From positions 1-64,000 of the IMG/VR virus record IMGVR_UViG_3300045256_000050: a stretch of 64,000 nucleotides of DNA. One strand, given 5' to 3'. The notes beneath the pieces were generated by a model. It saw only the letters and a list, made by a program, of their open reading frames with translations. It made no database searches and was not told the origin of the DNA. Shown here piece after piece: positions 13,142-62,078 of the stretch. Every line of letters starts with the position of its first letter. The stretch's first letter is position 1. Both the position numbers and the translations under genes were made by a program.

Positions 13142-13200
13142 TAGGGACGGACAACGGGGGCGAGCAACACCGCTCGCCCCTCACCTTCACTGAGGCGACG

Positions 13201-13446: not shown

Positions 13447-13482
13447 CACCGGCTGTCGTCGTGTAACCAAGAGGACACGACG

Positions 13483-13758: not shown

Positions 13759-13814
13759 CACCGGCTGCTAGGGGGCGAGGAAGACACTCGCCCCCTTCAC
13801 TGAGGACAACGCTC

Positions 13815-14039
13815 ATGACGATTCAGGCTCCCGCCCCGTTCCACGACGGCACGTTCGTCCTGCACAAGATCGAACTCAACGGGCACAAGTATTCCGCATG
13901 GTTCGGCAAGGACGGGGTTGTGTTCTCGGCCGAGCGGTTCAGCCGGGACAATCAGAAGACGTTCAACGTCCCGCTCAACCGTCAGAAGAACGTGGCCGAG
14001 CAGTTGACCAAGATCGGCAAGCGGTACACGGGCCGCTGA
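13815..14039 (+). CDS. Hypothetical protein
   Basis: CACTGAGG RBS, ATG at 13815; stop is the repeat TGA. Confidence 0.8.
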   Translation: MTIQAPAPFHDGTFVLHKIELNGHKYSAWFGKDGVVFSAERFSRDNQKTFNVPLNRQKNVAEQLTKIGKRYTGR

Positions 14040-14084
14040 CACCGGCTGTCGAAGTGTAAGAAACCCACACACTGAGGACGAACG

Positions 14085-14312
14085 ATGTACGCTCTGCTCG
14101 CCGAGTTCCGCCGGGGCAACAAGTACAACATCACCCTCAAGACGGGCAACGACGTGGCGAAGCTGGCCGACCTGGGGTGGATCGTGTTCGACGACCCGGC
14201 GGTGCTGGTCGCCGAGATGGAGAGCGGCAAGAAGATGCTCAACATGAAGTACGAGAAACGGGAGCAGATCATCGCCTACCTCCGGGCGATGACACCGGCT
14301 GTGGCGGTGTAA
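14085..14312 (+). CDS. Hypothetical protein
   Basis: CACTGAGG RBS; ends in the repeat (MTPAVAV*). Confidence 0.8.
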   Translation: MYALLAEFRRGNKYNITLKTGNDVAKLADLGWIVFDDPAVLVAEMESGKKMLNMKYEKREQIIAYLRAMTPAVAV

Positions 14313-14335
14313 GGCAACCCAAGAGAGGGACGACG

Positions 14336-14605
14336 ATGGCCTACCGCCTGACGCTGACGAAGGGTGAGCGGGATGCGATTGACTGGATCGGTCATCGCTA
14401 CCGCCACGGCGACGAGTTCTATCGCCTGCTGATGGAATGCACGGCGACCCCGGACGACGCCGATTGGGACGACGAGCGGGATATCGAGTACACGATCCCC
14501 GAACACGTCGCCTGGACGATGGGCGAGATCATCGACGAAGGGCTGGACTGCTTCGCCGACGAACTGTGCAGCAAGCTCCGGGCCTTCCGCAACCGCATCG
14601 TGTGA
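14336..14605 (+). CDS. Acidic hypothetical protein
   Basis: CCCAAGAGAGGG RBS, ATG at 14336; stop is the repeat TGA. Confidence 0.8.
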   Translation: MAYRLTLTKGERDAIDWIGHRYRHGDEFYRLLMECTATPDDADWDDERDIEYTIPEHVAWTMGEIIDEGLDCFADELCSKLRAFRNRIV

Positions 14606-14662
14606 CACCGGCTGCTAGGGGGCGAGGACAACCCTCGCCCCTCACCTTCACCGAGAGAAGAC

Positions 14663-14920
14663 ATGAACCGCACCCCGAGCATCCTGTCCGGCCTCCGCAC
14701 CGCCACCGTCGCCCCGGTCGCCCCGGTCAACGTGAGCCACAAGCGGGTTGACCTGTTCAACAGCATGTGCAACGGCACCGAGATCACGATCATGTCCCGG
14801 CCCGACGGCAAGTACCACACGGGCATCGTGACCAGCATCGCCCGTGAGGACGGCAGCGGGTACAAGTTCCTGGTCCGCCTGCACAACAGCCCGACGATCC
14901 ACTACGTCGTGATGATGTGA
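14663..14920 (+). CDS. Hypothetical protein
   Basis: Stop is the repeat TGA. Confidence 0.8.
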   Translation: MNRTPSILSGLRTATVAPVAPVNVSHKRVDLFNSMCNGTEITIMSRPDGKYHTGIVTSIAREDGSGYKFLVRLHNSPTIHYVVMM

Positions 14921-14966
14921 CACCGGCTGACGGGGCGTAACGATCACCCGCACTGAGGACACGACG

Positions 14967-15161
14967 ATGGCGAAGAAGATGCACACGACGGCCCCCATCA
15001 AGGACAAGGGGGCCGAGTTGTTCGCTCCGATCAAGCTCAGCGTTGGGCTGGGCCGGGTCGGGCACCAGCAGCACACCGGCGGCACCGGGTTCCACAACAG
15101 CCGGAAGCGGGCTGGCAACCGCTCGCAGCAGACCCGCAAGGCGGTCGCCGAGTACGCCTGA
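14967..15161 (+). CDS. Small basic protein
   Basis: CACTGAGG RBS; stop is the repeat TGA. Confidence 0.8.
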   Translation: MAKKMHTTAPIKDKGAELFAPIKLSVGLGRVGHQQHTGGTGFHNSRKRAGNRSQQTRKAVAEYA

Positions 15162-15197
15162 CACCGCCTGTGGTGGTGTAAGAAACCCAAGAGAGGG

Positions 15198-15452
15198 ATG
15201 CAGATGAGTCGTGAACGCTCGCTGGTTCGTGCGATCCGTGAAGTCAAGGTGCGGAAGCACCACCGTGACCTTGCCAAGCTGATCGCCGACCAGATGGACC
15301 CCGAGAACGTCGGGATCGACGGCCGACCGATCTACCGCAACGTCCACGTCGCTCGCCGCCACCTGCTGATCGACTGGCAGAAGTCGTTCCGCAAGCGTCG
15401 GTGCCGACGGTGTGCCCGGCGAGTCGCCAAGTGCGAACTCCGGGCTGCGTGA
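15198..15452 (+). CDS. Arg-rich small protein
   Basis: CCCAAGAGAGGG RBS; stop is the repeat TGA. Confidence 0.75.
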   Translation: MQMSRERSLVRAIREVKVRKHHRDLAKLIADQMDPENVGIDGRPIYRNVHVARRHLLIDWQKSFRKRRCRRCARRVAKCELRAA

Positions 15453-15528
15453 CACCGGCTGTAGGGGTGTGAGAGGGGCGGGCGAGTGACCCGCCCCTGA
15501 CCTGCGACCTTCACTGAGGACACGACAC

Positions 15529-15942
15529 ATGGCGACCCGGCTCTACCCGCACACGAAGAACACCGTCATCATCGAGAAGCTGCTGGGCGTGCCCGAAGGC
15601 ACGGCCCTCCGGCACGCCGCCCTCAACGAGCCGTTCAAGCAGGCGAAGGCCAAGCTCAACGAGGGGTTCGCCGACCTGACGCTGGAGCAGCAGGCCGAGC
15701 GGCGGCGGGAGTACATGCGACTGGACGAGGCCGAGTGGGACGCCAACAACTCCAGCGAGGAGATCGCCAAGTACGACGGGTTCTTAACCTTCGGGTGGGG
15801 CCGGGTGGTGCATCGGCACTGCTCCGAGCCGAGCGGCTACACCAACGACCCGGTGCTGGTCGCCCAAATCCTCCGGGCACAGGGGGTGACGCTCCCGCCC
15901 GACGTGAAGATCGAAGACCTGGAAGGGCTGGGGTGGTGCTGA
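15529..15942 (+). CDS. Hypothetical protein
   Basis: CACTGAGG RBS; stop is the repeat TGA. Confidence 0.8.
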   Translation: MATRLYPHTKNTVIIEKLLGVPEGTALRHAALNEPFKQAKAKLNEGFADLTLEQQAERRREYMRLDEAEWDANNSSEEIAKYDGFLTFGWGRVVHRHCSEPSGYTNDPVLVAQILRAQGVTLPPDVKIEDLEGLGWC

Positions 15943-16009
15943 CACCGGCTGTAGGGGTGTGAGAGGGGCGGACGAGTGAGCCGCCCCCACACCCAAGAGA
16001 GGGAACACG

Positions 16010-16342
16010 ATGGCGACCCGCAACCGCTGGAACAAGTGGAACATCCGGGCCAAGCTGAAGACCGACTTCAAGTGGTGCCGCCGGGCACTGATCGTGCTGT
16101 ACCAGCGGCAGACCGCTGACGAGCAGTCGGCCACCCGGACCAAGCACGACAACGACCGGGGCTTCAACCAGCCCGACGCCCGGCGGGGCAGCGAACTCGC
16201 CCGCAAGGCCATGACGCCGGTGCTGTTCGAGCCGTGGGAAGTGATCGAGGCCCGCAAGCTCCTGATGAAGTACGCCGGGCAACTCGCCCGGATCGCCAAC
16301 GAGAAGGAGCGGGCGGCGAAGGCCCGGCCGGTGACGGTGTGA
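16010..16342 (+). CDS. Conserved phage hypothetical protein
   Basis: 'RALIVLYQRQTADEQ...N.RGF..PDA...KYAGQL' motif seen in many phage proteins; stop is the repeat TGA. Confidence 0.85.
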   Translation: MATRNRWNKWNIRAKLKTDFKWCRRALIVLYQRQTADEQSATRTKHDNDRGFNQPDARRGSELARKAMTPVLFEPWEVIEARKLLMKYAGQLARIANEKERAAKARPVTV

Positions 16343-16424
16343 CACCGGCTGAGGGGGTGTGAGAGAGACGGACAACGGGGCGGGTGAGTGACCCGCCCCT
16401 CACCTTCACTGAGGACAGACGACG

Positions 16425-16619
16425 ATGCCGACCTTCGGACTCAAGCACAACATCGGCAGCAACACGACCACCGCCGGGAAGTTCGACAGCAGCGGCCTGA
16501 CCTACCTCGGCATGCTGAGCGGTGAGAAGGAGATCAAGTGGACGACGATGACCCTGGCGGCGGGCATCTACCACATGTACACGAACGGCAGCGAGATGTA
16601 CCTGTTCCCGGAGCAGTGA
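16425..16619 (+). CDS. Hypothetical protein
   Basis: CACTGAGG RBS; stop is the repeat TGA. Confidence 0.8.
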   Translation: MPTFGLKHNIGSNTTTAGKFDSSGLTYLGMLSGEKEIKWTTMTLAAGIYHMYTNGSEMYLFPEQ

Positions 16620-16687
16620 CACCGGCTGAGGGGGTGTGAGAGAGGGGCGGGCGAGTGACCCGCCCCCTTCACTAAGGAGCATCGCAC

Positions 16688-16870
16688 ATGTCGAAGTACA
16701 ACGTCCGCCGCCTGAACCACCTGCTCGCCAAGCACACCGCCTTCCGCTCGCTCGCCGACCTGCTCACGAGCGTGGCCGGTGGCTACACCCCGACGATCAT
16801 CTGCCGCACCTGCCAGCACGGCGAACTCGTCCGCCTGCTCCGGGACAACGGGGTGGCTGTCCGGGTCTGA
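16688..16870 (+). CDS. Hypothetical protein
   Basis: AAGGAG RBS; stop is the repeat TGA. Confidence 0.75.
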   Translation: MSKYNVRRLNHLLAKHTAFRSLADLLTSVAGGYTPTIICRTCQHGELVRLLRDNGVAVRV

Positions 16871-16916
16871 CACCGGCTGAGGGGGTGTAACGAGGACACA
16901 ACGGAGGACGCAAGAC

Positions 16917-31936: not shown

Positions 31937-33070
31937 ATGTGGGATGTTTTCACGGATGTCTCTGGGTTCGTTCCTCGCCGAGTCTGCGGTGCCTGGACGA
32001 ACGAGTTGATCGCACTGCATAACGTCTCTGACATTCTGATCGGGGTTTCATATCTCCTCATCCCCCTGTTCATCTGGAAATTCGTCCGGGCGAAACCGGG
32101 GATGAAGTTCTCCCTGATCTTCTACGCCTTCTGTGACTTCATCGTGTCGTGCGGCCTGACACACTTCATGGATGTGGCCCTCTTCTACTGGCCCAACTAC
32201 AGGCTGGCCGGGATCATCAAGCTGGTCTGCGGGGTTGTTTCCTTCAGTACAGTCATCCTGCTGTTCAGAATGTACCCACTCGCCGTCAAGATGATCCAGA
32301 CGCCGAGGGAGATACGGGAGAGGACCGAGACGCTATCCCAGAAGAACGACGCCCTGGAGAAGCAGAACGGGCATCTTGTCTTCGAACAAAAAGCGAAGGA
32401 CGACTTCCTGGCGATCCTCGGCCACGAACTCCGCAACCCACTCGCCGCCGTTTTCAACGCAAAACAACTTCTGGAACGGGACTCGGCCAAGAGCCGGGAA
32501 CTCGGGATGAAGATACTGGAGAACCAGATCGACCACCTGAACCGGCTGGTGGACGACATCATCAACGTCGCTCGTGCCGTCCAGGGTCGGCTGGAGTTGA
32601 GGCAGGACAAAACGTGTGCCCGTCAGATCATCGAGCGGGCGATGGAACTCGCCGCAGCCACCATCAAGAAGCACAAGTGCGTGGTGAGTGTCGAACAACC
32701 GCCGGAAGACCTGTGCTTTGTTGCCGATGAGATGCGCATGGCTCAGGTTGTGAGCAACCTGCTTACCAATGCTGCGAAGTATGGGCACGAAGGCGGCAAA
32801 ATCGAAGTTACTGTTACCTGCGAGGGTGGTATACTCCACCTATCAGTTCGAGATTACGGCATCGGCATCGGGCCGGAGAAGCTGGACACCATCTTCGGAC
32901 TCTGTGTCCGAACGGAACGTGCTGCCAAGAAGGCGGACGGTATGGGCGTCGGACTGGCGATGGTCCGGGCGATTGTCGAGCTTCATGGCGGTCATGTCAG
33001 TGCTAAGAGCAACGGCGTCGAGCAAGGGGCTGAGTTCCTGGTCACGATACCAATCACGGAGGTAGCATGA
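31937..33070 (+). CDS. Sensor histidine kinase with an ethylene-receptor-like 3-TM input domain
   Basis: H-box HELRNPL, N-box NLLTNAAKY, G1 DYGIGI, G2 GMGVGL; N-terminal SDILIGVSYLLIP...FIVSCGLTH resembles the ETR1 ligand-binding domain. Confidence 0.9.
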   Translation: MWDVFTDVSGFVPRRVCGAWTNELIALHNVSDILIGVSYLLIPLFIWKFVRAKPGMKFSLIFYAFCDFIVSCGLTHFMDVALFYWPNYRLAGIIKLVCGVVSFSTVILLFRMYPLAVKMIQTPREIRERTETLSQKNDALEKQNGHLVFEQKAKDDFLAILGHELRNPLAAVFNAKQLLERDSAKSRELGMKILENQIDHLNRLVDDIINVARAVQGRLELRQDKTCARQIIERAMELAAATIKKHKCVVSVEQPPEDLCFVADEMRMAQVVSNLLTNAAKYGHEGGKIEVTVTCEGGILHLSVRDYGIGIGPEKLDTIFGLCVRTERAAKKADGMGVGLAMVRAIVELHGGHVSAKSNGVEQGAEFLVTIPITEVA

Positions 33071-36057: not shown

Positions 36058-37032
36058 ATGGAGCGGTTTGCGAACAATCTCAGAACTACCGTCAATCAGA
36101 TCGGCGGCATCAACAATAGCTCGAACCCGGTGACTTTCACCGTGGCCGATGCTACCGGGTTCCCGTCGTCCGGCAACTTCCGAATCATCATCGACAGCGA
36201 GATCATGCTGGTGACTTCCGTCTCCGGCAACAACTTCACCGCCACCCGTGCCCAGGAGGGGACGGTGATCGCCAAGCACGACCACACCGCCCCGGTCTAC
36301 CACCTGTTCACTGCGGGGGCGTTGACGGCGGCTTGCTCGGATACCGTCCAGAGCGGGCAGTACGCCCAACTCCCGGCCAGCCCCGAGCGGGGGCGACTGT
36401 ACGTCCCGAACAACGACCAGGACTGGCAGGTGGGTCAGGCGTCGGGGTGGATGCCGGTCGGGCCGATGATTAAGATGACGTACCCGGACAACAGCCTGTA
36501 CTCCTGGGTGAACCAGGGCAGTACGACGATCACGCAGAACGGGCACCACATCATCATGACCGGGGATAACCACACGTTCGGCACCCGGTACGCCCGGATG
36601 AAGACGGCCCTGACGCCGCCGTTCCGGTACACGCTGATCTTCACCGCCAACGTCGAGAACATCTTCACCCGGAACTCGGCCTGTGGGATTATCCAGCGGG
36701 AGTCCAGTACCGGGAAGTGTATTACCATCGAGCAGTCCTACGGGGTGAACTTCCTGCGGTTCGGCGTGTTGTATTTCAACACCGTCACGAGCTTTAACAG
36801 CATGCTCTACGGGTGGACGGATTACCCGCACCCGAAGTTCATGCGGTTCCTCCAGGTTCACGACGACGGGACGAACGTGAACTACAACCTGTCCTACGAC
36901 GGCATCTTCTACGAAACCATCTACAGCCGGGGGCGGACGACCCTGATTACGGCCGACCAGATCGGCTTTGAACTCGGGGAAACGGTGGACGGCCTGAACA
37001 AGATGATCGTCTGGAGTATCGAAGAGGGCTAA
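36058..37032 (+). CDS. Tail fibre/receptor-binding-like protein, paralog 1
   Basis: N-terminal 'FPSSGNFRIIIDSEIMLVTSVSGNNFTATRAQEGT' virion-attachment-like module. Confidence 0.75.
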   Translation: MERFANNLRTTVNQIGGINNSSNPVTFTVADATGFPSSGNFRIIIDSEIMLVTSVSGNNFTATRAQEGTVIAKHDHTAPVYHLFTAGALTAACSDTVQSGQYAQLPASPERGRLYVPNNDQDWQVGQASGWMPVGPMIKMTYPDNSLYSWVNQGSTTITQNGHHIIMTGDNHTFGTRYARMKTALTPPFRYTLIFTANVENIFTRNSACGIIQRESSTGKCITIEQSYGVNFLRFGVLYFNTVTSFNSMLYGWTDYPHPKFMRFLQVHDDGTNVNYNLSYDGIFYETIYSRGRTTLITADQIGFELGETVDGLNKMIVWSIEEG

Positions 37033-37997
37033 TGGAAAGATTCACTAATAATGCGTTCACGACCCTGGCCGGTGCCATCGACGAGAGTACGACCCCCGTC
37101 ACCTTCGCCGTCGCCAGTGCGTCCGCATTTCCCACGGCAGGCAACTTCCGCATTGTGGTTGATAGTGAAATCCTCCTGGTGACTTCCGTCTCGGGGAACA
37201 ACTTCACTGCGACGAGGGGTGCGGAAGGCAGCCCGATCCAGGCCCATGCGGTCGGGGCCGGGGTGCGGCACGTCTTCACTGCGGGGGTGTTGACACAAGT
37301 CCTCGCCGACAACATCACCACCGGGCCGTATGCGAGTCTGCCGTCCTCTGCGGGGCGAGCGGGCCGGATGTACGTTCCGACCGACGAATATGTGGTTATG
37401 GTGAGCGACGGGTCGAACTGGCTTCGGTACGGCCCCATCTATCCGGTGACACGGCCGAACTTCTCCGGGGCGACTCAGGTTAACTTCTCGGGCACGACGT
37501 ACAGCCAGACGGCGTTCGGTGCCCAGATTGTCCAGGTGGGCGGGGCTGGAGGTACGAGGCGTGGGGTGTTCAAGAGTACGATCACCGCCCCGTACAAGAT
37601 CACCATGATTTACAGTCAGACGGGTTCGCTGCCGGGGGATACCCGGACGGCGGGTTTGGCTATCCGGGATTCGGCGACCGGGAAGTTGGTCACGTTCGAG
37701 ATAGCGATGGCGTTCGGGGCTTGCGGCGTTCACCAGTGGAACTCGCCCACGTCGTTCAACAACTCACCGCTGGGCTGGGGTTCGATTGAGTACACGGCGG
37801 GGTGGATCAAGTTCCTCCAGATTCACGACGACGGGACGAACCACAGGTTCAACTTCTCGGCGGACGGTATTTATTGGGACACGCTTTACACCCAGAGCAA
37901 GACGGCGTGGCTGGCAACCCCCGACCAGTACGGGTTCATTGTGGGCGAGGGGTCGGCGACGACGAACGTCCTGAGCTTTAAGGAGGAGAGTGCGTAA
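37032..37997 (+). CDS. Tail fibre/receptor-binding-like protein, paralog 2
   Basis: Same N-terminal module and HDDG(T/A)N C-terminal motif. Confidence 0.75.
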   Translation: MERFTNNAFTTLAGAIDESTTPVTFAVASASAFPTAGNFRIVVDSEILLVTSVSGNNFTATRGAEGSPIQAHAVGAGVRHVFTAGVLTQVLADNITTGPYASLPSSAGRAGRMYVPTDEYVVMVSDGSNWLRYGPIYPVTRPNFSGATQVNFSGTTYSQTAFGAQIVQVGGAGGTRRGVFKSTITAPYKITMIYSQTGSLPGDTRTAGLAIRDSATGKLVTFEIAMAFGACGVHQWNSPTSFNNSPLGWGSIEYTAGWIKFLQIHDDGTNHRFNFSADGIYWDTLYTQSKTAWLATPDQYGFIVGEGSATTNVLSFKEESA

Positions 37998-38971
37998 TGG
38001 CCGTTGAAGTGTTTGGTAACAACGCAGTCTCGTACCTGACGGCTGCCCTGGATAGCTCGACCGACCCGGCACCGATCTCCGTTCACAACGGTTCGGTGTT
38101 CCCGAGGAGTGGGAACTTTCGCATCCAGATCGACAGTGAAATCCTCCTGGTGACATCCGTCTCCGGGAACACGTTCACCGCCAGCCGTGCCCAGGAGGGG
38201 ACGCAGATCGTCGCTCACGAGAACGGATCGACCGTCAAGCACATCTTCACGGCCGGAGGATTGAATAAGGCGTTGGACGAGTCCGTTGTCGTCAGCAGCT
38301 ACTCTGCCTTGCCGTCTGCCGGGAGGGCGGGACGGGTTGCCTTCACTAGCGACGACCGGGTGATGTTGTTCAGTGACGGGTCGAACTGGTTGCCTTATGG
38401 CCCGTTCACCCGGTTCTACCCGCCGGTGCTGTCGGACTTAACCTGGGTCAACCAGGGGGCGTCGAGAACGGCTACCCAGCTTGGCACGGTGTTCAACATA
38501 AACAGCACGTTGCCGAACGGCAGTTCGAACCGAGGGGGTTTGGTGAAGACGGCCCTCACGCCCCCGTTCAAGCTGACGATCTGCTACACCATTAACAAGC
38601 GGGTGATGGCCGAGAGCTTCTTTTCGGGCGGGATCATGGAGTACGAGTCGTCGTCCGGGAAGTTCATCACCTGGGAGCAGGGCACGTTCAACTTCATCAA
38701 CATCGGGGTTCACACCTGGAACAACGGCACTTCGTTCGCCGGGACGATCTACGGGTGGGCACCCTACGACGAGCCGACGTACCTGCGGTTCATGCAGATT
38801 CACGACGACGGGGCGAACGTGAACTACAACTTCAGCTACGACGGGATCGGCTGGTACACGCAGTACAGCCGTGCCCGGACGAGCTTCATCAACGCCGACA
38901 AGTACGGGGTGATGCTGTCCGAGGGGCAGGGGAGCGTCACCGTCTTCAGTTTCAAGGAAGAGTCGGCCTAA
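37997..38971 (+). CDS. Tail fibre/receptor-binding-like protein, paralog 3
   Basis: Same architecture; shares the SFKEESA end with paralog 2. Confidence 0.75.
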   Translation: MAVEVFGNNAVSYLTAALDSSTDPAPISVHNGSVFPRSGNFRIQIDSEILLVTSVSGNTFTASRAQEGTQIVAHENGSTVKHIFTAGGLNKALDESVVVSSYSALPSAGRAGRVAFTSDDRVMLFSDGSNWLPYGPFTRFYPPVLSDLTWVNQGASRTATQLGTVFNINSTLPNGSSNRGGLVKTALTPPFKLTICYTINKRVMAESFFSGGIMEYESSSGKFITWEQGTFNFINIGVHTWNNGTSFAGTIYGWAPYDEPTYLRFMQIHDDGANVNYNFSYDGIGWYTQYSRARTSFINADKYGVMLSEGQGSVTVFSFKEESA

Positions 38972-39061: not shown

Positions 39062-39406
39062 ATGGCGAAACAATCCAAGATTCTGTTGCCCGAAGGCGTA
39101 GAAGATAAGGTCGAAGATCAGGAACAGACCCAGGACGAGGAGAACGTCAAGGAAGTCGAGATCAACTACCCGGCCACCGAGCGGGACGAAGAGTGTTTCT
39201 TCCTCATGTACCACATGGGCATGGCCCCGTCCGAAGCCTATGCCCTGAAGGACGATCACCGCCGCTGGCTGATGGCCCGGTTCATCGGGCAGAAGCAGAT
39301 GGAGCGGGAGATGGTGGAGCGGAACCGCCTCGCACAAGCGGTCATGGCTAACCCGCAAGGGCCACCGGCCGGTATGGGCATACCCAATCTCAGGGTGCAA
39401 CGGTAA
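39062..39406 (+). CDS. Hypothetical protein (possible tail assembly chaperone-like)
   Basis: AAGGA RBS; 'FFLMYHMG...EAYAL....RRW' pattern. Confidence 0.7.
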   Translation: MAKQSKILLPEGVEDKVEDQEQTQDEENVKEVEINYPATERDEECFFLMYHMGMAPSEAYALKDDHRRWLMARFIGQKQMEREMVERNRLAQAVMANPQGPPAGMGIPNLRVQR

Positions 39407-40043
39407 TGTAGGTCTTCGGGAGGATTTCGGTCGCCCGTAGAAGAACCTTCATGTAGTCCGAGGACTTGCCGAACATCGAGTCCACCCGGTAGTCCTCGCC
39501 CGAGCAGTTCCCGTCGTGGCCCCAGGCCAGCAGGAAGTGTTCGTTATCCACGTTGTAGTATTGGCCGTCGGCCGGGTCCGAGAAGATCATCTGCTTCTCG
39601 GTGTAGCCGATGGCGACCATGTAGTGCCAAGTTTTCTTCCCGGACCGGACGAGTACGATCACCGGCCGGTCCTGGGATACCTCGTATTTCAACTCGTCGA
39701 AGTTGTCGTTCTTTAACGTGGCCCGGATGCCGTGCTGCTTCAGCACCCGGACGATGTAGTCCGGGGCGGTCATGCCCACTTCGTCGCCGCCGGTGCCGAA
39801 CCAGTGGGTCTTGGTCATCTGCTTGACCTGCTCGATGGTCACGTCCTGCCCGTAGTGGCGTAACACCATCGCCGTGCTGGTCGGGCCGCAGGTGATGCTG
39901 TCGGGCTGTTGTGCGGTCGGGAAGTTCGGGATGGCGTGGGCGGGCGGGTAGTCGAAGTGTTCCGGTATAGAACCGACGATTACAGCCATGACGAACAGCA
40001 CGGCCCCGAACAGGCCGAGCCATTTCTTTTTGATGGTAATCAT
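39390..40043 (-). CDS. C39-family cysteine peptidase with an N-terminal membrane anchor
   Basis: QQPDSITCGPTS catalytic Cys, WHYMV His, DPA; GAGGAG RBS before ATG 40043. Confidence 0.85.
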   Translation of the reverse strand: MITIKKKWLGLFGAVLFVMAVIVGSIPEHFDYPPAHAIPNFPTAQQPDSITCGPTSTAMVLRHYGQDVTIEQVKQMTKTHWFGTGGDEVGMTAPDYIVRVLKQHGIRATLKNDNFDELKYEVSQDRPVIVLVRSGKKTWHYMVAIGYTEKQMIFSDPADGQYYNVDNEHFLLAWGHDGNCSGEDYRVDSMFGKSSDYMKVLLRATEILPKTYITVAP

Positions 40044-40102
40044 GTTCTCCTCCTCATGAAGAACGTTTTCTGTAGTTATTCTTATTTTCCTCCTTTCCGG
40101 TG

Positions 40103-40130
40103 TTGACATTCTGTAAGAAGCGGCTATACT
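40103..40130 (+). promoter_or_regulatory. Sigma70-type promoter driving the ncRNA locus
   Basis: TTGACA-N16-TATACT. Confidence 0.7.
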
Positions 40131-40137
40131 GAGGGGC

Positions 40138-40291
40138 AGAGTGCAAGCTAAAGGTGAATCTCAAGCTAACCTGCTTGGCAATCAGTGTTGGTTCGAATCC
40201 AACTCCCGCTACTTCGCCCAAACGAGTACATAGCGGGATACCCCAATGGCAGAGGGTAAGCCGGGCTATCTCAGCCACAGACTATCACTCT
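40138..40291 (+). ncRNA. Circularly permuted tRNA-like RNA 1 (Y-RNA/YrlA-like)
   Basis: T-arm GTTGG-TTCGAAT-CCAAC, then a loop-closed acceptor-like stem TCCCGCTA/TAGCGGGA, then a D-arm containing TGG; ends pair (AGAGTG/CACTCT). Confidence 0.65.
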
Positions 40292-40314
40292 AAGCTAAAA
40301 GATTGGCAGGTGTT

Positions 40315-40468
40315 CCCTTAATCGAGTGCCAGTGTTTACAACCCTGAGATGCGTGTTCGAATCACGCCTCCCTCGCTCTCGCCCAAACTACTTACGAGGG
40401 AGTGGTCATAATGGAAATGGTACAGGGTAGATAGATTGAATAACTGGCTTAAACGGATACAGTAAGGG
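40315..40468 (+). ncRNA. Circularly permuted tRNA-like RNA 2 (Y-RNA/YrlA-like)
   Basis: T-arm GCGTG-TTCGAAT-CACGC, stem CTCCCTCG/CGAGGGAG, D-arm, ACCCTG/CAGGGT, outer stems GCCAGT/ACTGGC and CCCTTA/TAAGGG. Confidence 0.7.
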
Positions 40469-40518
40469 GACTCGCAGTAATTGTACCATGCCGTTTTCAC
40501 TACTAATGAAAATTCTCG

Positions 40519-40556
40519 GGCCAGGGGGCGGGCTATGCCTCCTGGCCTCTTTTTTT
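40519..40556 (+). terminator. Rho-independent terminator
   Basis: GGCCAGGGGGC...GCCTCCTGGCC plus a T-tract. Confidence 0.8.
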
Positions 40557-40566
40557 GAAAGCACTT

Positions 40567-40890
40567 ATGTTCGCTGAAGAAGAACTGCTCGCCACCAAGA
40601 AGCCCGCCGTGTACTGCCCGGACGGGAAGAACCAATACTTCACTTGGTTCAGGATGTACGACAACCACCCGCCGGGGTTCAGGCCGAACCTGCTGCCGGT
40701 GGAAGTGTTCGATTTGATTCGTGAACAGGAAGAACTGGATGCGACGGATGCGGAGGGGAATCCTCCCTACGCCATCGGGTTTGATACCGAGGAAGAGGCG
40801 TGGGAGGCGGCAATCACGGCCGTGCTGACCATTGCGGAGCGGAACGATCAGCGTCGTTCAGGAGATACCTCTTCCGCTTCGGCCACTTGA
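40567..40890 (+). CDS. Hypothetical protein
   Basis: Acidic ORF, ATG at 40567. Confidence 0.65.
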   Translation: MFAEEELLATKKPAVYCPDGKNQYFTWFRMYDNHPPGFRPNLLPVEVFDLIREQEELDATDAEGNPPYAIGFDTEEEAWEAAITAVLTIAERNDQRRSGDTSSASAT

Positions 40891-41314
40891 TCTTGAACGA
40901 CTTCCAGTGAATGTACTCGATCCGCTCCGGGTTCCACTCGTCGTCGAGCAGCGTAAGTACGATACTTTCTTCGTGGGCCAACAGGCCCATCGCACAGTAT
41001 TCCGGCACCAGGACGGAGTTGTTCGTGTCCAGGTCAACCGTGTAGGTGTTATTAAACGTGTCCGAGTCGTCCCGGAGATCGACGACGGCCAGGAACACCC
41101 CGCCCCGGACGACGTGGACGAGCCGCTGGCTGTTGAGCCGGTGCAGCCCCTTCACCGTGCCGCTGCCCAGGTAATCGACCGTCACCCCGACGGGGAACAT
41201 GTGTTCCATTACGGAACTGCGGTAGAGTTCGAAGGAACCGCTGTGCTGTTGTTCGACGTACTCGTGTTCGATGTAAAGCAAGTTTGCGATCTGATCGACT
41301 TCTTCCTTTTTCAT
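40814..41314 (-). CDS. dTDP-4-dehydrorhamnose 3,5-epimerase-like cupin (divergent RmlC)
   Basis: 'GTVKGLH...VVRGGVFLAVVDLRDDSDTF...VLVPEYCAMG...IKWP'. Confidence 0.75.
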   Translation of the reverse strand: MKKEEVDQIANLLYIEHEYVEQQHSGSFELYRSSVMEHMFPVGVTVDYLGSGTVKGLHRLNSQRLVHVVRGGVFLAVVDLRDDSDTFNNTYTVDLDTNNSVLVPEYCAMGLLAHEESIVLTLLDDEWNPERIEYIHWKSFKIKWPKRKRYLLNDADRSAPQWSARP

Positions 41315-46491: not shown

Positions 46492-48141
46492 GTGAACCGT
46501 TGGAACAAGTTCTACATCACCACCGCCATTGACTACCCGAACGCCCTCCCGCACAACGGCACGGCGTTCGAGAAGATCGGTGCCGACGTGCAGGCCCGGT
46601 TCCGCCGGTTCTGCGGCTTCCACCCGTTCCTCCTGATGGGGAACGACGAGAACACCGTTAAGGTGGTCAAGGCCACGCCCGAAGGGCTGACGACGCAAGA
46701 GTACGTCGATAACATGGCCGTCGCCTTCATGCACGAGTGGCAGAAGCTCGGCATCGACTACTCGGCCTTCCTCCAGACCAGCAAGGACCGGCACCGGCAG
46801 GGCGTCGAGAAGTTCATCAACGCCGTCTGGGCCAGCGGCTACATCGAGAAGCGGCCGTACACCGCCCTGTACTGCGAGGGGTGCGAGGAATTCAAGACCC
46901 CGAAGTCGCTCGACTACGCCAAGCGGTGCCCGCACCACCAGAACACCCCGGTCGTGGAAGTGACCGAGGAGAACTACTTCTTCAAGTTGTCGGCCTTCAA
47001 GGACCGGCTGCTCGACTACTACAAGAAGGCGGAAATCTTCCCGGAGGCCCGCCGCAACGAGATGCTTGACTTAGTGCAGACCGAACTGCACGACATGAGC
47101 ATCAGCCGTTCGAGCCGGGGCTGGGGCATCCCGGTGCCGTTCGACACGACGCAGACGATCTACGTCTGGTTCGACGCCCTCCTGAGCTACCTGACCGGCG
47201 TCGGGTTCGGCTGGGATTGGGGGATGTTCAAGAACCTCTGGCCCGCCGACGTGCATGTGATCGGGAAGGACATCACCCGGTTCCACTGCACCCTCTGGCC
47301 TGCGATGATTATGGCCTACAACGAGGTAGTGCAGAACCAGCACTCCATCGGCCTCGCCGAAGAACTGCCCGTGATCGACCTGCCGAAGCAGGTGTTTTCC
47401 CACGGCTTCATCTACCGGAAGAAGGGGCACGAACTCGTCCGGGAGTCGAAGACGGACGCCGAGTCGAACCTGGGGCCGCTCGTCGAGGAGTTCGGGGCCG
47501 AGGCGTACCGCTACTACTTCATGGCGAAGTGCCCGTTCGGTGCGGACGGCGAGTACAGCAGGGACCACATTCGGGAAGTGTACAACGCCGACTTGGCGAA
47601 CAACCTGGGGAACTTGGTCAACCGCTCCATCCAGATGATCGTGAAGTACGGCGGCGGGAAGTTGCCGTTCGGCAAGACGGAGAAGGTCTGGCTCGACCCG
47701 AAGACGATGACCGACTTCCGCACCGACATGGCGTTGTTCAACTACCGAGCCGCCCTGACGACCATCTGGAACATCCTGCACCGGGCGAACGAGTACATCG
47801 AGGCGAACAAGCCCTGGGAGTTGACAAAGACCGACCAGGGCAAGTGCCTGGACGTGCTGAGGGAACTCGTCGCCGCCCTGCGGATCGTGTCCCTGATGCT
47901 CAAGCCGTTCATGCCGGGGACTGCGGCCAAGATCGCCGTGGCTCTCGGTCTGAAGGACTGGCCGAACATGACCTTCGGAGACTTGGCCCGGATCGCTCAC
48001 TACAACGGAGATGGGCTGGGTGAGGTTCAAGTCGAACCCATCCAGCCGCTCTTTCCTCGTTCTGTCGCCCCGGTCCAAAAAGAACCGAAAGGACCGGGTA
48101 AGGTCAAAGGCACGCCGGGAACTGAACCGGCTGCTGGCTGA
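46492..48141 (+). CDS. metG: Methionyl-tRNA synthetase (short form) with variant signature motifs
   Basis: YITTAIDYPN, CxxCE knuckle, YVWFDAL, IGKDI.RFH, N.DLANNLGNL.NR; HIGH appears as HNGT, KMSKS as RESKT. Confidence 0.93.
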   Translation: MNRWNKFYITTAIDYPNALPHNGTAFEKIGADVQARFRRFCGFHPFLLMGNDENTVKVVKATPEGLTTQEYVDNMAVAFMHEWQKLGIDYSAFLQTSKDRHRQGVEKFINAVWASGYIEKRPYTALYCEGCEEFKTPKSLDYAKRCPHHQNTPVVEVTEENYFFKLSAFKDRLLDYYKKAEIFPEARRNEMLDLVQTELHDMSISRSSRGWGIPVPFDTTQTIYVWFDALLSYLTGVGFGWDWGMFKNLWPADVHVIGKDITRFHCTLWPAMIMAYNEVVQNQHSIGLAEELPVIDLPKQVFSHGFIYRKKGHELVRESKTDAESNLGPLVEEFGAEAYRYYFMAKCPFGADGEYSRDHIREVYNADLANNLGNLVNRSIQMIVKYGGGKLPFGKTEKVWLDPKTMTDFRTDMALFNYRAALTTIWNILHRANEYIEANKPWELTKTDQGKCLDVLRELVAALRIVSLMLKPFMPGTAAKIAVALGLKDWPNMTFGDLARIAHYNGDGLGEVQVEPIQPLFPRSVAPVQKEPKGPGKVKGTPGTEPAAG

Positions 48142-59403: not shown

Positions 59404-60054
59404 TTACAGCTTAACGTGGTAGACCTTGACTAATAACGGGTCCAGTTCGGCTTGGAGTTCACCGAACGAGACGACGTGTTCGTCCCGGTCTTCCCAGATG
59501 TGAATCTCTTCCAGGTCCGTCCAGAGGGCAACGAACTGGTCGATAATCCACTTCTTCCACGGGAAGGTTTCCTGTGGCTTCGGACCTTTTGCCAGCTTAA
59601 TAGCCGGACCGTCGTTCCCGAGGAGGAACAACTGTACCTTCGGATCGACCCACCGGAAAGTACCGTTACCGACCTTCTCGACCTGGGCGAGCTTCCCGTC
59701 GTGGATGACCCGGTAGACTTGCTGGGCAAGCCCAGCGTGTCGGCCGGTCATGATGACGGTCGCCCGTTCGGGGTCGGCGGCGGACTTCCTCAATGCCTCC
59801 ACGGTTTCCGTGATGAACCACTCCGGCGTCAGCGGGTCCGGGCAGAGCGGCGGTTGCATCGTCTCCGCACGCCCGTACCAGCCCTGCCGCATCGGAATGA
59901 ACTTCCCGTGCTTTGCCGACAGTTCCTTCGACAAGCTCTTGGAGATTGCCCAGGGGATGCCGGTAGCCTTCTCGTATTGCTTACGAGTTTCGGGGGTATC
60001 GACGGGGTTCTTCCACAGAGTCCCGTCGAGATCGAAGATGTCTAAGTATTTCAT
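59404..60054 (-). CDS. HAD-superfamily phosphatase (Swiss-Army-Knife RNA-repair-like HAD)
   Basis: FDLDGTL, MTGR, WKK and WEDR motifs. Confidence 0.8.
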   Translation of the reverse strand: MKYLDIFDLDGTLWKNPVDTPETRKQYEKATGIPWAISKSLSKELSAKHGKFIPMRQGWYGRAETMQPPLCPDPLTPEWFITETVEALRKSAADPERATVIMTGRHAGLAQQVYRVIHDGKLAQVEKVGNGTFRWVDPKVQLFLLGNDGPAIKLAKGPKPQETFPWKKWIIDQFVALWTDLEEIHIWEDRDEHVVSFGELQAELDPLLVKVYHVKL

Positions 60055-60105
60055 GACGGCACCCGTGGTCATCGAGGTTTTAGCTCAATATACCACGGGC
60101 GTCGG

Positions 60106-61626
60106 TTATTGTAAAGACTTCCGCAGGAGCGACCGGAACATTTGCAGTTCCATCTCCCGCTTCTTCTGAGTTGCGTCTTCAGTGCGGAGTTGACCGGAGA
60201 ACGGGTCTTTGAGGGACGCAAAGGCGTCGGTCACTTCACCGTTACCGTTGATCGGCTCGACTCTTGGGGAGTTGAGGTAGGCCACGAATGCGTCGGCCAA
60301 GCTGTCGGGTTTGCCGCCGACCTTCGTCAACCACGCCCGAATCTTTCGGGTCGGAACGCCCGAAGTCATGATGGCGTCCGTCATTTCGGCGAGCGAGTTA
60401 GCGTCCACTTCCGGGGACAGGCCCAGGGTCTTCACCAAAACAACGATCTTCTTCACGTCTTCCGGGCGGACGCCTTCGAGTTGTCGGACGATCACGCCTT
60501 CCGGCAACTTCTGCATCATCCACGCAATCGGGGCGTGGCGGTCGCCGATCTCCCGCAGGCCGCTCGGCATCTCCATGTTCAGGTCGCCGCCCACTTCTGG
60601 TGGGAACAGGTGATCCGTAACACCGAGAACGCTCAGGAGCTTCAGGAACTTCCGGGGGTCGATGTCCTCGTAGCCCATGCCCTTCATGAACTCGTCCATA
60701 GCGGCCTTTCGGTCCACCTTAGCGAGCAGCGGGGCAGCCTTGCGGATCATCTCGGTTTCTTCGTCGCTGATGGACGCCGGATCGCCGTAGCGGGCCATCA
60801 TCCGGGCGAACCGGAGGATACGCATCGGGTCTTCACTGAACTTGGCGTCGAACCCGCCGATGGGCGAGATACGACCGGCCTTCAGGTGGTGGAGTCCGCC
60901 GAAGAAGTCGCTCAGTTCCTTGTTCGGGCCGTTGTCGTTGCCGAGCAACAGGTACATCGAGTTGATGGTGAAGTCACGGCCAGCCGCATCGTCTGCGTGC
61001 GTGCCGTTCATGATGTCGCCCTCTTTGCTCCGGGTGAACACGCTCAGGTCGAACTCGTCGTTGCGAACCTTAACACCGAAGCTGTACGGACGACCGCCGG
61101 AGTCCTTCTTCTTCACCCAGAACACCTGCTGAGCGGCCGGTTGTTCGCCGCCGAGTCCGCCCGCCTGCATGGACGAGTTCGGGCCGTTGTCCGGCTGGCC
61201 GTTCTCGCCGATGAACTTGAACTTGTTCTGGGTGAGGATGTGGTACACTTCGTCGGGGCTGGCGTCCGTCACCAGTTCGATGTGACGGGGCTTGCGGCCC
61301 GTCAGGTGGTCACGGAGCGCACCGCCGGTCAGGTACAGTTTCTTGCTGCCCACCTTGACCGGCTTGTCCTCGCCCGTCTTCGGGTCTTTGCTCCAGCCCC
61401 AATTCGCACTCTTCTTGAAAGCTCGCACGAGCGGTGCGAGATTCTTGTTCTTCCCGAAGTGTTCGGAGTTCGTGTCGTCGGAAACGGTAAAAGGCGGCAG
61501 GTCGTTGCCGTCGCCCAGGGAGATTCGTGAAGTCAACGGCTCCTCGCCAGCACCACCGGCACTGCCGAGGCCGTTTCTCGCCTTCTGTTCTTCGACGAAT
61601 TCCCGGAATGTTCTCTTCTTTAGCAT
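60106..61626 (-). CDS. CCA-adding enzyme/poly(A) polymerase family protein with a substituted catalytic DxD
   Basis: GGALRDHL, RDFTINSM, EDPMRILR; the DxD position reads H-I-E. Confidence 0.85.
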   Translation of the reverse strand: MLKKRTFREFVEEQKARNGLGSAGGAGEEPLTSRISLGDGNDLPPFTVSDDTNSEHFGKNKNLAPLVRAFKKSANWGWSKDPKTGEDKPVKVGSKKLYLTGGALRDHLTGRKPRHIELVTDASPDEVYHILTQNKFKFIGENGQPDNGPNSSMQAGGLGGEQPAAQQVFWVKKKDSGGRPYSFGVKVRNDEFDLSVFTRSKEGDIMNGTHADDAAGRDFTINSMYLLLGNDNGPNKELSDFFGGLHHLKAGRISPIGGFDAKFSEDPMRILRFARMMARYGDPASISDEETEMIRKAAPLLAKVDRKAAMDEFMKGMGYEDIDPRKFLKLLSVLGVTDHLFPPEVGGDLNMEMPSGLREIGDRHAPIAWMMQKLPEGVIVRQLEGVRPEDVKKIVVLVKTLGLSPEVDANSLAEMTDAIMTSGVPTRKIRAWLTKVGGKPDSLADAFVAYLNSPRVEPINGNGEVTDAFASLKDPFSGQLRTEDATQKKREMELQMFRSLLRKSLQ

Positions 61627-61676
61627 AACTATGACTCCACCTTCCTTTATTCTAGTTATGAGCCACGCACTCAATC

Positions 61677-62078
61677 TTAGGGAACCGAAGGCGGGTTCAG
61701 ACCGAGTTTGTATAGTACGAAAGCGGCGATGACGATCCAGCAGAGTTGGATTACGAAGCCCCAGATCGACGCCCACCGGCCTTCGTTGCCTTTGGAAGTG
61801 TGTTCGAGGGCCATGAGCCGCTTATCAATCTCGTTCAACTTGTCTGCGTGCGCAGCGACTTCGGTGAACACGGCGTTCGTGTTCCTCGACTCCAGCACCA
61901 CGATCCGCTGGACTGTTTCGTTGTAGAGCTTGTTAAGGGTTTCCAAGCGGGTGTCCTGCTCGACCTGCTTAGTCTGGATAGACTTGACCCGCTCGTCGAT
62001 CCGAGTGCTGAGTTCAAACAGCTTTTGGATGTTCTCCGACGCTTGGGTCAATATCTGCATTTGTAGGTCTTCACGCAT
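61677..62078 (-). CDS. Coiled-coil protein with a C-terminal TM segment
   Basis: Heptad pattern and hydrophobic tail. Confidence 0.8.
   Translation of the reverse strand: MREDLQMQILTQASENIQKLFELSTRIDERVKSIQTKQVEQDTRLETLNKLYNETVQRIVVLESRNTNAVFTEVAAHADKLNEIDKRLMALEHTSKGNEGRWASIWGFVIQLCWIVIAAFVLYKLGLNPPSVP

What the first reader, a model, noticed from the sequence alone, without database searches (positions are those of the whole stretch)
40103..40556. Standalone transcription unit of two circularly permuted tRNA mimics (Y-RNA/YrlA-like)
Seen: a promoter (TTGACA-N16-TATACT) and a terminator (40519) bracket two units of about 150 nt. In each, tRNA elements appear in permuted order: T-arm with TTCGAAT loop, then an acceptor-like stem closed by a 19-nt loop sharing TCGCCCAAAC, then a D-arm with TGG. 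The anticodon stem is continued by a long stem formed from the 5' and 3' ends. Unit 2 also has TTTACAA (a Val-like anticodon loop) just before its 3' anticodon strand. Known: bacterial YrlA Y RNAs have this permuted tRNA-like domain attached to a Ro60/Rsr-binding stem, and permuted tRNA genes are known in some algae and archaea. No Ro60/TROVE gene is in this window. Inference: phage Y-like RNAs, decoys for host anticodon nucleases, or true permuted tRNAs. Standard tRNA finders would probably miss them.
Basis: partly seen in the sequence, partly recalled or inferred. Interest (0 to 1): 0.8.

Follow-up and report, generated by a model that had tools for sequence, protein, structure and literature searches.

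The report
Orphan phage tRNA-mimic RNA pair
A giant phage from a hot-spring mat carries a small, self-contained gene for two structured RNAs that each fold like a tRNA whose parts are in rotated order; this is the design of bacterial YrlA "Y RNAs", but here the usual Ro60 protein gene and Ro60-binding site are missing.

Summary
Window 40103-40556 holds a near-consensus sigma-70 promoter, two RNA units and an intrinsic terminator. Each unit has the order "anticodon" 3' strand, variable region, T arm, 7-8 bp acceptor hairpin with a large loop, D arm, "anticodon" 5' strand, set on a long stem. Seven distinct variants from related phages (80-89% identical) support the fold: 99% of cells pair against 38-48% in slid controls, and 14 of 23 core pairs covary. 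After in-silico re-permutation ARAGORN calls all 28 constructs tRNA, and none of the 14 native units. A covariance model of these units finds YrlA RNAs upstream of Ro60/TROVE genes in about half of 80 viral loci. A model of those viral YrlAs hits both units in return, but only over T arm, acceptor stem and D arm. The Ro60-binding stem, the GNCGAAN0-1G motif and a nearby TROVE gene are all absent (contig 1-74 kb examined). The Val-like TTTACAA and the TCGCCCAAAC loop motif are not conserved, so true permuted tRNAs and anticodon-nuclease decoys are unlikely. Verdict: a new, orphan variant of the YrlA-type tRNA mimic. Its partner and function are unknown, and no expression data exist.

The parts
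40103..40130 (+). sigma-70-type promoter TTGACA-16 nt-TATACT
   Evidence: 11 of 12 consensus positions. Both hexamers are kept in 7 variants while the spacer diverges.
40138..40301 (+). Unit 1 (about 165 nt): permuted tRNA-like head on a nearly invariant irregular lower stem (helices 40146-40167 with 40273-40296). AAGCTAAA occurs on both strands of the stem.
   Evidence: RNAalifold consensus. Lower stem: 15 pairs, 98% paired against 26-47% when slid, but no compensatory change. AAGCTAAA occurs only here in the window.
40173..40179 (+). Unit 1 'anticodon-stem' 3' strand, pairs with 40260-40266
   Evidence: Seven pairs, compensatory changes at 2 positions among orthologues.
40187..40203 (+). Unit 1 T arm (5 bp, loop TTCGAAT)
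   Evidence: U-A to A-U compensatory change in 3-4 variants.
40204..40238 (+). Unit 1 acceptor-like hairpin: 7 bp plus an optional 8th pair; A73-C74 start the loop (40212-40230, 12-19 nt in relatives)
   Evidence: Two compensatory pairs (C-G to U-A, G-C to A-U) in L217 and L223. Loop length and sequence vary.
40241..40256 (+). Unit 1 D arm (loop AATGGCAGA with G18 G19)
   Evidence: The same D arm occurs in a short tRNA-Leu(CAA) gene of an Actinomadura genome.
40260..40266 (+). Unit 1 'anticodon-stem' 5' strand
40305..40492 (+). Unit 2 (about 190 nt): permuted tRNA-like head on a long irregular stem (40305-40336 with 40438-40492)
   Evidence: Lower stem: 27 pairs, 99.5% paired against 41-48% when slid, 7 pairs with compensatory changes.
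40342..40346 (+). Unit 2 'anticodon-stem' 3' strand, pairs with 40423-40427
   Evidence: G-C to A-U in L219. T40345C together with A40424G in a wastewater contig.
40351..40367 (+). Unit 2 T arm (5 bp, loop TTCGAAT)
40368..40402 (+). Unit 2 acceptor-like hairpin: 7 bp plus C(-1):G73; G73-C74 start the loop (40376-40394, 15-22 nt in relatives)
   Evidence: U-A to C-G compensatory change in 3-4 variants. The loop motif is lost in L229.
40406..40420 (+). Unit 2 D arm (4 bp, loop AATGGAA)
   Evidence: invariant among orthologues.
40423..40427 (+). Unit 2 'anticodon-stem' 5' strand
40494..40512 (+). Small A/U hairpin before the terminator
   Evidence: 93% paired, no covariation. Weakly supported.
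40518..40556 (+). Intrinsic terminator (13-bp GC-rich stem, T run)
   Evidence: Two compensatory pairs.

Best explanation
This is a conserved non-coding RNA operon of a jumbo-phage clade. Host-type sigma-70 RNA polymerase is predicted to transcribe it into about 420 nt that carry two paralogous tRNA mimics. Each head is a complete tRNA body without an anticodon loop, in circularly permuted order. It has the tRNA invariants U8, A14, G18-G19, TTCGA in the T loop and an A15:U48 Levitt pair, so it should fold into the L shape. This is the same design as the effector-binding module of bacterial and phage YrlA Y RNAs. The stems that carry the heads are unrelated to the Ro60-binding stem of YrlA. I therefore infer a Y-RNA-like adaptor or decoy. 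The head would engage enzymes that recognise the tRNA elbow or acceptor end: RNase P, CCA-adding enzyme, modification enzymes and nucleases. The idiosyncratic stems, one of them almost invariant in sequence, would bind a different and still unknown partner. Both heads have an exact 7-bp acceptor stem stacked on a 5-bp T stem, a large unstructured loop and a conserved N73-C74. I therefore think RNase P cleavage in the loop, followed by CCA addition, is likely, as shown for Mycobacterium smegmatis YrlA. The result would be nicked two-piece tRNA-like RNAs. Shown here: sequence, conserved signals, fold with covariation, relation to the YrlA head, and absence of Ro60 features. Inferred: transcription, processing, partner and role.
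For: Signals.
Non-coding: frame-breaking indels across 7 variants. The operon is 80-89% identical where flanking genes are 69-88%. Soil and wastewater contigs match the RNA at 90-99% but not its flanks.
Fold: 111 consensus pairs, 14 of them compensatory. In the core, 99.4% of cells pair against 38-48% when slid, and 14 of 23 pairs covary.
tRNA body: ARAGORN of 28 re-permuted constructs tRNA and 0 of 14 native units.
YrlA relation: model R1, built only from these units, gives 40 hits of at least 20 bits in 288 kb of viral TROVE loci. All are on the TROVE strand and all but one lie upstream of the gene; the best is 36.7 bits, E 3e-8. Control viral DNA gives 2 such hits in 884 kb. Model R2, built from 26 viral YrlAs, hits both units in all variants at 22-33 bits, over model positions 54-108 only.
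Processing precedent: M. smegmatis YrlA with a 7-bp acceptor stem is cut by RNase P and receives CCA in vivo (PMC4201824).
Context: a phage tRNA nucleotidyltransferase lies next to a HAD_SAK_1 RNA-repair phosphatase; the window also holds MetRS and tRNA-Glu.
Against: There is no evidence of transcription or processing, because the RNA-labelled runs are probably DNA. No partner protein was identified; the syntenic neighbours (C39 peptidase, 107-aa ORF, sugar epimerase, 373-aa ORF) gave no RNA-related signal. The unit 1 lower stem has no covariation, so its pairing is not proven. Only about 74 kb of the 245-kb genome was inspected, so a divergent Ro60 could still exist. All seven variants belong to one narrow clade, and much of the core covariation is between the two paralogous units.
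Confidence: 0.6

Rival explanations
1. These are bona fide Y RNAs. A Ro60/TROVE protein encoded elsewhere in the 245-kb phage genome, or by the host, binds the stems through a divergent site, and the complex acts in RNA quality control or repair like Rsr-YrlA.
For: The head is of YrlA type. Tandem YrlA-like modules are common upstream of viral TROVE genes, for example three hits in each of L290 and L243. Some jumbo phages encode TROVE (PMC7824862). The phage has RNA-repair genes.
Against: GNCGAAN0-1G and the GGCCGRA / CGGTTAYC motifs of viral YrlAs are absent in all 7 variants. Model R2 detects the Ro60-binding stem alone in Bxz1 (a YrlB-like hit of 36.5 bits) but nothing comparable in the window. 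There is no TROVE in contig 1-74 kb or within 10 kb either side in relative L219. In the published survey nearly all YrlAs lie within 4 kb of Ro60. The phage contig was not among the best 80 of 137 TROVE loci in IMG/VR, which is a weak negative.
Confidence: 0.2
2. The tRNA-like heads are only processing handles. They recruit RNase P and 3' processing enzymes to cut the primary transcript, and the functional products are the released stem strands, acting as small regulatory RNAs. This would parallel mascRNA/MALAT1 or tRNA-linked sRNAs.
For: Exact 7-bp acceptor stems with large loops. The flanks of unit 1 are nearly invariant in sequence without covariation, as expected for a sequence-specific function.
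Against: A full D arm and the elbow invariants are not needed for a mere RNase P handle. The unit 2 stem is maintained by 7 compensatory pairs, so what is conserved there is the duplex and not a free strand. No target complementarity was identified; only the 10-nt loop motif was searched against the window.
Confidence: 0.1
3. These are true circularly permuted tRNA genes, matured by excision and ligation at the extended anticodon stem and then opening of the acceptor loop. The product would be decoding tRNAs, for example Val (UAC) from unit 2.
For: The full tRNA body is present in permuted order. TTTACAA lies just 5' of the stem strand in the window. The Rfam tRNA model gives a weak partial hit of 16.8 bits.
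Against: The putative anticodon loop changes among close relatives (TTTACAA; CTACAG; TTGCTG; TTTGCT), and unit 1 has none. No bulge-helix-bulge motif appears at the junction in the consensus fold. The stem beyond the junction is conserved and covaries. A splicing endonuclease of the archaeal or eukaryotic type is not known in bacteria (paper's statement).
Confidence: 0.03
4. This is a two-piece (permuted) tmRNA-like molecule that rescues ribosomes.
For: The gene order resembles permuted tmRNA genes. A short frame, GCA...TAA TGA, lies 3' of unit 2.
Against: ARAGORN and Rfam find no tmRNA. Neither acceptor stem has a G3:U70 pair. The candidate tag frame is broken by a 1-nt indel in 5 of 7 variants. 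That region pairs with the 5' strand of unit 2, with covariation.
Confidence: 0.02

Closest known systems
YrlA (Y RNA-like A; Rfam RF02553) of bacteria and mycobacteriophages
   Same: A circularly permuted tRNA-like module (T arm, closed acceptor-like stem, D arm) set on a stem made by the 5' and 3' flanks. tRNA tertiary invariants are present. Arrangements are often tandem. Reciprocal covariance-model hits were obtained. The M. smegmatis member has a 7-bp acceptor stem that is cut by RNase P and receives CCA.
   Different: No GNCGAAN0-1G / GGCCGRA Ro60-binding stem and no CGGTTAYC motif. The D- and T-stem sequences differ from the nearly invariant GCUC/GAGC and GCGGG/CCCGC. No TROVE gene lies nearby. 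The operon has its own promoter and terminator. The acceptor loops are 12-22 nt. No hit to RF02553 even at E<=10.
Circularly permuted tRNA genes (Cyanidioschyzon merolae, some archaea)
   Same: The 3' half precedes the 5' half, the acceptor ends are joined by a loop, and the ends of the transcript form the extended anticodon stem.
   Different: No conserved anticodon loop and no bulge-helix-bulge motif. The extended stem is itself under selection. The setting is bacterial and phage.
Two-piece (permuted) tmRNA
   Same: Permuted gene order of a tRNA-like domain; processing in the acceptor loop gives a nicked, base-paired molecule.
   Different: No G3:U70, no tag reading frame, no pseudoknots detected, and an intact D arm.
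Other tRNA mimics used as processing or recognition handles (mascRNA of MALAT1, viral 3' tRNA-like structures); comparison from general knowledge
   Same: The tRNA fold is recognised by RNase P or the CCA-adding enzyme outside translation.
   Different: Those are not permuted, they sit at RNA 3' ends, and they belong to eukaryotes or RNA viruses.

Membership tests
YrlA / bacterial Y RNA | Permuted tRNA-like module (V region, T arm, acceptor-like stem-loop, D arm) closed by a stem formed from the flanks | tested here: met
   Covariation. ARAGORN on re-permuted constructs, 28 of 28. R1 finds TROVE-adjacent RNAs. R2 hits both units over positions 54-108 at 22-33 bits.
YrlA / bacterial Y RNA | Match to the curated Rfam model RF02553 (gathering score 69 bits) | tested here: not met
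   No YrlA match even at E<=10. Caveat: the model is narrow. It gives only 32.5 bits on the Bxz1 YrlA and no gathering-level hit in 16 viral TROVE loci.
YrlA / bacterial Y RNA | Ro60-binding motif GNCGAAN0-1G (in viral members GGCCGRA) in a helix formed by the 5' and 3' ends | tested here: not met
   Absent from all 7 variants. Present, strictly or in relaxed form, upstream of nearly all viral YrlA hits. R2 positions 1-53 and 109-157 are not aligned to these RNAs, whereas held-out Bxz1 aligns over the full length at 96.5 bits.
YrlA / bacterial Y RNA | Nearly invariant D-stem and T-stem sequences and the YUAY / CGGTTAYC start of the V loop | tested here: not met
   The viral YrlA consensus is GTAGCTCAAT.GG.AGAGC and GCGGGTTCGA.TCCCGC. 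Here the stems are CCC/GGG and TCAT/ATGG (D) and GTTGG/CCAAC and GCGTG/CACGC (T).
YrlA / bacterial Y RNA | Encoded within about 4 kb of a Ro60/TROVE gene, on the same strand | tested here: not met
   No TROVE among window ORFs of at least 300 aa or among the smaller neighbours. None in contig 64-74 kb. None within 10 kb either side in relative L219. Contig 74-245 kb could not be read.
YrlA / bacterial Y RNA | Bound and stabilised by Ro60/Rsr | not testable with these tools
   Needs co-immunoprecipitation or EMSA.
Circularly permuted tRNA gene | All tRNA parts present in rotated order | tested here: met
Circularly permuted tRNA gene | Conserved anticodon loop that can be rebuilt at the junction | tested here: not met
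   The sequence 5' of the stem strand varies among close relatives, and unit 1 has no candidate.
Circularly permuted tRNA gene | Bulge-helix-bulge motif at the junction for a splicing endonuclease | tested here: not met
   In the consensus fold the internal loops next to the stem are 5x6 nt (unit 1) and 5x10 nt (unit 2), not 3-4-3.
Two-piece tmRNA | Detection by ARAGORN or Rfam tmRNA models, a G3:U70 pair, and a conserved tag ORF | tested here: not met
   Acceptor pairs 3:70 are C:G and G:C. Frame-breaking indel.
Canonical tRNA | Cloverleaf in standard order with an anticodon loop | tested here: not met
   ARAGORN of 14 native units. The Rfam tRNA model gives 16.8 bits against a gathering score of 29.

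The most novel reading that the evidence does not exclude
These are Ro60-independent tRNA mimics. RNase P and the phage's own tRNA nucleotidyltransferase would mature them into nicked, two-piece tRNA-like molecules with free CCA ends. They would then act in the tRNA-centred arms race, either as decoys or competitors for host toxins and enzymes that attack or modify tRNA 3' ends or elbows, or as cofactors of the phage RNA-repair module. That would make them a new functional class derived from the Y-RNA head.
Probability: 0.17. Interest if true: 0.8.

Novelty: new variant of a known kind. Interest (0 to 1): 0.55.

Why it matters
The role of the tRNA-like head of bacterial Y RNAs is still unknown. 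Until now it has been seen almost only next to Ro60, so its function could not be separated from that of Ro60. This phage clade keeps two such heads under strong selection on entirely different stems, with no Ro60 gene or site in view. It also carries acceptor stems that look made for RNase P and CCA addition, and it encodes its own CCA-adding enzyme, an RNA-repair phosphatase and a MetRS. That offers a simple system for asking what a tRNA elbow and acceptor mimic does on its own. It also shows that standard tRNA and Rfam scans miss this class: ARAGORN and Rfam found nothing, and RF02553 missed 16 of 16 viral TROVE loci at its gathering score.

Tried and rejected
- BLAST of the operon and of 20 kb around it against 50,697 phage records: no match.
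- Pattern scans of IMG/VR with the T-loop plus loop motif, a looser version, a three-part version and a unit 2 pattern. These returned only this phage (two contigs) or chance hits.
- The single metagenome scan returned 87 loci, all ordinary tRNAs followed by the motif or chance matches.
- The first genome-contig scan gave nothing.
- The complement of the loop motif elsewhere in the window: one coding-region copy, consistent with chance.
- A hybrid tRNA made from the unit 1 5' half and the unit 2 3' half: rejected because the acceptor strands do not pair (direct reading).
- Local anticodon-like hairpins (CAGTG/CCCTG; CAAGC/GCTTG) as the real stems: rejected for unit 2 because of the T40345C/A40424G double change and a 1-nt deletion. 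For unit 1 the G-to-C with C-to-G change supports the long-range stem.
- tmRNA tag frame: rejected.
- Finding Ro60 in the phage through an IMG/VR scan with a TROVE alignment: inconclusive. Only the best 80 of 137 loci were listed and the patterns were actinophage-biased.
- ESM Atlas look-ups of the two syntenic unknown proteins: uninformative.
- Expression: the runs labelled RNA are probably DNA, and only assembler contigs were available.

Full report
**What is there**

The window is the first 64 kb of a 245-kb viral contig, IMGVR_UViG_3300045256_000050. It comes from a hot-spring microbial-mat metagenome, and window coordinates equal contig coordinates. It is a tailed jumbo phage: three tail-fibre paralogues lie at 36058-38971 and a baseplate module just beyond the window.

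Between a divergently oriented C39-type peptidase gene (39390-40109, minus strand) and a 107-codon ORF (40567-40890) lies about 450 nt of non-coding DNA. It contains:
- the only promoter-like site in the scanned stretch 39500-41200, TTGACA-16 nt-TATACT at 40103-40130 (11 of 12 consensus positions);
- the only terminator-like site in that stretch, at 40518-40548 plus a T run.

ARAGORN finds only a tRNA-Glu at 2818-2891 in the whole window. Rfam finds nothing at the locus at gathering scores. At E<=10 it gives only a partial 16.8-bit tRNA hit on unit 2 and no YrlA hit.

**Anatomy**

Both units have the same order of elements (coordinates checked):

| Element | Unit 1 | Unit 2 |
|---|---|---|
| 'Anticodon-stem' 3' strand | 40173-40179 | 40342-40346 |
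| Variable region | 7 nt | 4 nt |
| T arm (5 bp, loop TTCGAAT) | 40187-40203 | 40351-40367 |
| Acceptor-like hairpin (7 bp plus an optional eighth pair, 19-nt loop) | 40204-40238 | 40368-40402 |
| D arm (AATGG loop) | 40241-40256 | 40406-40420 |
| 'Anticodon-stem' 5' strand | 40260-40266 | 40423-40427 |

The tRNA invariants are in place: U8, A14, G18-G19, TTCGA in the T loop, and an A15:U48 Levitt pair. Each stem continues into a long irregular helix formed by the unit's flanks: 40146-40167 with 40273-40296, and 40305-40336 with 40438-40492.

**Relatives**

DNA searches against isolated phages found nothing. Motif scans of IMG/VR, of the metagenome collection and of GTDB genomes found only the same phage or chance hits.

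Laying public contigs on the locus showed that soil and wastewater metagenomes hold the RNA region at 90-99% identity, while their flanks do not align at 80% or more.

Homologues of the two adjacent proteins led to contigs with the same synteny. This yielded seven distinct versions of the operon at 80-89% identity. The flanking genes are 69-88% identical at the nucleotide level. Indels that are not multiples of three run through the region, which excludes a coding function. Both promoter hexamers are kept while the spacer diverges.

**Structure support**

- RNAalifold on the seven operons predicts 111 pairs. Fourteen of them show compensatory double changes and almost none are broken.
- On the 14 unit cores, the four-helix permuted cloverleaf is paired in 99.4% of cells, against 38-48% when partners are slid by 1-3 columns. 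Fourteen of 23 pairs change on both sides, and 0 of 500 shuffles reach these values. Part of this covariation is between the two paralogous units.
- Among orthologues there are still compensatory changes in both T arms or acceptor stems, in both 'anticodon' stems and in the terminator.
- An independent wastewater contig adds T40345C together with A40424G.
- The unit 2 lower stem has 7 compensatory pairs. The unit 1 lower stem is almost invariant in sequence, so its pairing is unproven.
- When each core is re-permuted in silico and closed with an artificial 7-nt loop, ARAGORN of 28 constructs tRNA. It of 14 native units.

**What is not conserved**

The shared loop motif TCGCCCAAAC is lost or altered in several relatives. 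The loops vary from 12 to 22 nt and stay C/A-rich. Only the first loop residues, N73-C74, are constant. The Val-like TTTACAA is replaced by unrelated sequences in close relatives. A candidate tmRNA-like frame 3' of unit 2 is broken by a 1-nt indel in five variants.

**Relation to YrlA**

Published work describes YrlA as a Ro60-binding stem carrying a tRNA-like module that resembles a circularly permuted tRNA with a closed acceptor stem. YrlA is encoded within about 4 kb of Ro60 and has a GNCGAAN0-1G motif near its 5' end. I tested the relation as follows.

- **Positive control.** Upstream of the Ro-like gene of mycobacteriophage Bxz1, Rfam RF02553 gives 32.5 bits, below its gathering score of 69. 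It gives no gathering-level hit in 16 diverse viral TROVE loci. Its silence on this locus is therefore weak evidence.
- **Forward test.** Model R1, built only from the 14 units, was run on 80 viral TROVE loci fetched with a TROVE alignment. It gave 68 hits, all on the TROVE strand. Forty score at least 20 bits and all but one of these lie upstream of the gene; the best is 36.7 bits, E 3e-8. In 884 kb of unrelated viral DNA rich in tRNA-like T loops, only 2 hits reach 20 bits.
- **Reverse test.** Model R2 was built from 26 of those TROVE-adjacent RNAs with their flanks. It recovers the held-out Bxz1 YrlA over its full length (96.5 bits) and a YrlB-like stem next to it (36.5 bits). It hits both units in all seven variants at 22-33 bits, but only over model positions 54-108, which cover T arm, acceptor stem and D arm.
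- **Ro60 features.** GNCGAAN0-1G is absent from all variants. The GGCCGRA and CGGTTAYC blocks, and the D/T-stem sequences that are nearly invariant in viral YrlAs, are also absent.
- **TROVE gene.** No TROVE protein is encoded in the window, in the next 10 kb, or within 10 kb either side in a relative. The remaining 171 kb of the genome could not be read.

**Interpretation**

The locus is a real, selected, structured RNA gene. Its two heads are tRNA mimics of the YrlA type, but its stems are not Ro60-binding stems of the known kind.

I commit to a Y-RNA-like adaptor or decoy in which the head engages tRNA-recognising enzymes and the stems bind another partner. Both heads combine an exact 7-bp acceptor stem, a 12-bp acceptor/T stack, a large single-stranded loop and a conserved N73-C74. 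M. smegmatis YrlA, which has a 7-bp stem, is cut by RNase P and receives CCA in vivo. Maturation into nicked two-piece molecules is therefore plausible.

The phage encodes a tRNA nucleotidyltransferase (60106-61776) next to a HAD_SAK_1 RNA-repair phosphatase (59404-60072). It also encodes a MetRS and a tRNA. This fits a role in tRNA-centred conflict or repair, but that link is inference.

Rivals, in order of weight:
- a canonical Ro60 partner encoded elsewhere;
- heads that serve only as processing handles;
- true permuted tRNAs;
- tmRNA-like function.

The last two are contradicted by the data above.

**Limits**

- There are no transcript data.
- All variants belong to one narrow clade.
- The E-values of the home-made models are rough.
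- Only 30% of the phage genome was seen.

**Origin hint**

The unit 1 D arm is identical over 16-18 nt to that of a short (74-nt) tRNA-Leu(CAA) gene in an Actinomadura genome. It is also identical to the D arm of a canonical-order tRNA-like contig in a wastewater run, which shares the unit 1 T arm as well. This is consistent with descent from an ordinary tRNA gene.

Noticed in passing
window 300-16900, + strand: The motif [C/G]TGACACCG[A/G]CTG..G.GG.GTAA occurs about 46 times (47 matches at up to 1 mismatch against 4.5 expected). There is one copy in each gap between about 46 small same-strand ORFs, spaced 250-450 bp apart. The TGA is usually the upstream stop codon, and several copies are followed by GC-rich hairpins. 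It could be a phage-specific promoter, a terminator or processing signal, or a cassette junction.
   Followed up: partly
window 59404-61776, - strand: A tRNA nucleotidyltransferase (CCA-adding/PcnB-like, 556 aa) lies directly next to a HAD_SAK_1 'Swiss Army Knife RNA repair' phosphatase. A SprT-like gene is called beside them in the sister contig. Together they look like a phage RNA-repair module.
   Followed up: partly
window 46492-48141 (+) and 2818-2891 (+): The phage encodes a methionyl-tRNA synthetase (458 bits to NF008900, below its 598-bit cut-off; 358 bits to TIGR00398, above its cut-off) and a tRNA-Glu(UUC).
   Followed up: no
window 31937-33070 (+): A histidine kinase with an ethylene-receptor-like N-terminal domain (ETR1_N + HisKA + HATPase_c) is encoded in the phage genome. 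This is unusual cargo for a phage.
   Followed up: no
window 36058-38971 (+): Three tandem paralogous genes of about 322 aa with tail-fibre-like N termini (phrog_8469, phrog_19068). Relatives carry only two.
   Followed up: no
Read-laying run X15, record 1 (maps to window 40182-40202 and 40239-40256): A 198-nt wastewater contig carries the unit 1 D arm and T arm in canonical tRNA order around an anticodon-like arm (loop CTTAAAC). It is followed by a second D-arm-like segment. It may be the ordinary tRNA relative of unit 1, or another rearranged array.
   Followed up: partly
L313 2372-2445 (Actinomadura sp. OS1-43 contig): A 74-nt tRNA-Leu(CAA) without a long variable arm shares the unit 1 D arm exactly. 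It was the only GTDB hit for the D-arm plus T-loop pattern.
   Followed up: partly
L219 9760-10011 and L221 2-169: Two relatives carry an extra small ORF of about 83 aa between the RNA terminator and the 107-aa ORF. The junction downstream of the operon is therefore variable.
   Followed up: no
viral TROVE loci L290, L243, L303, L270, L311, L250: Two or three YrlA-type tRNA-like modules lie in tandem upstream of viral Ro60 genes. Rfam RF02553 at its gathering score found none of them in 16 loci tested, so the curated model under-detects viral YrlAs.
   Followed up: partly
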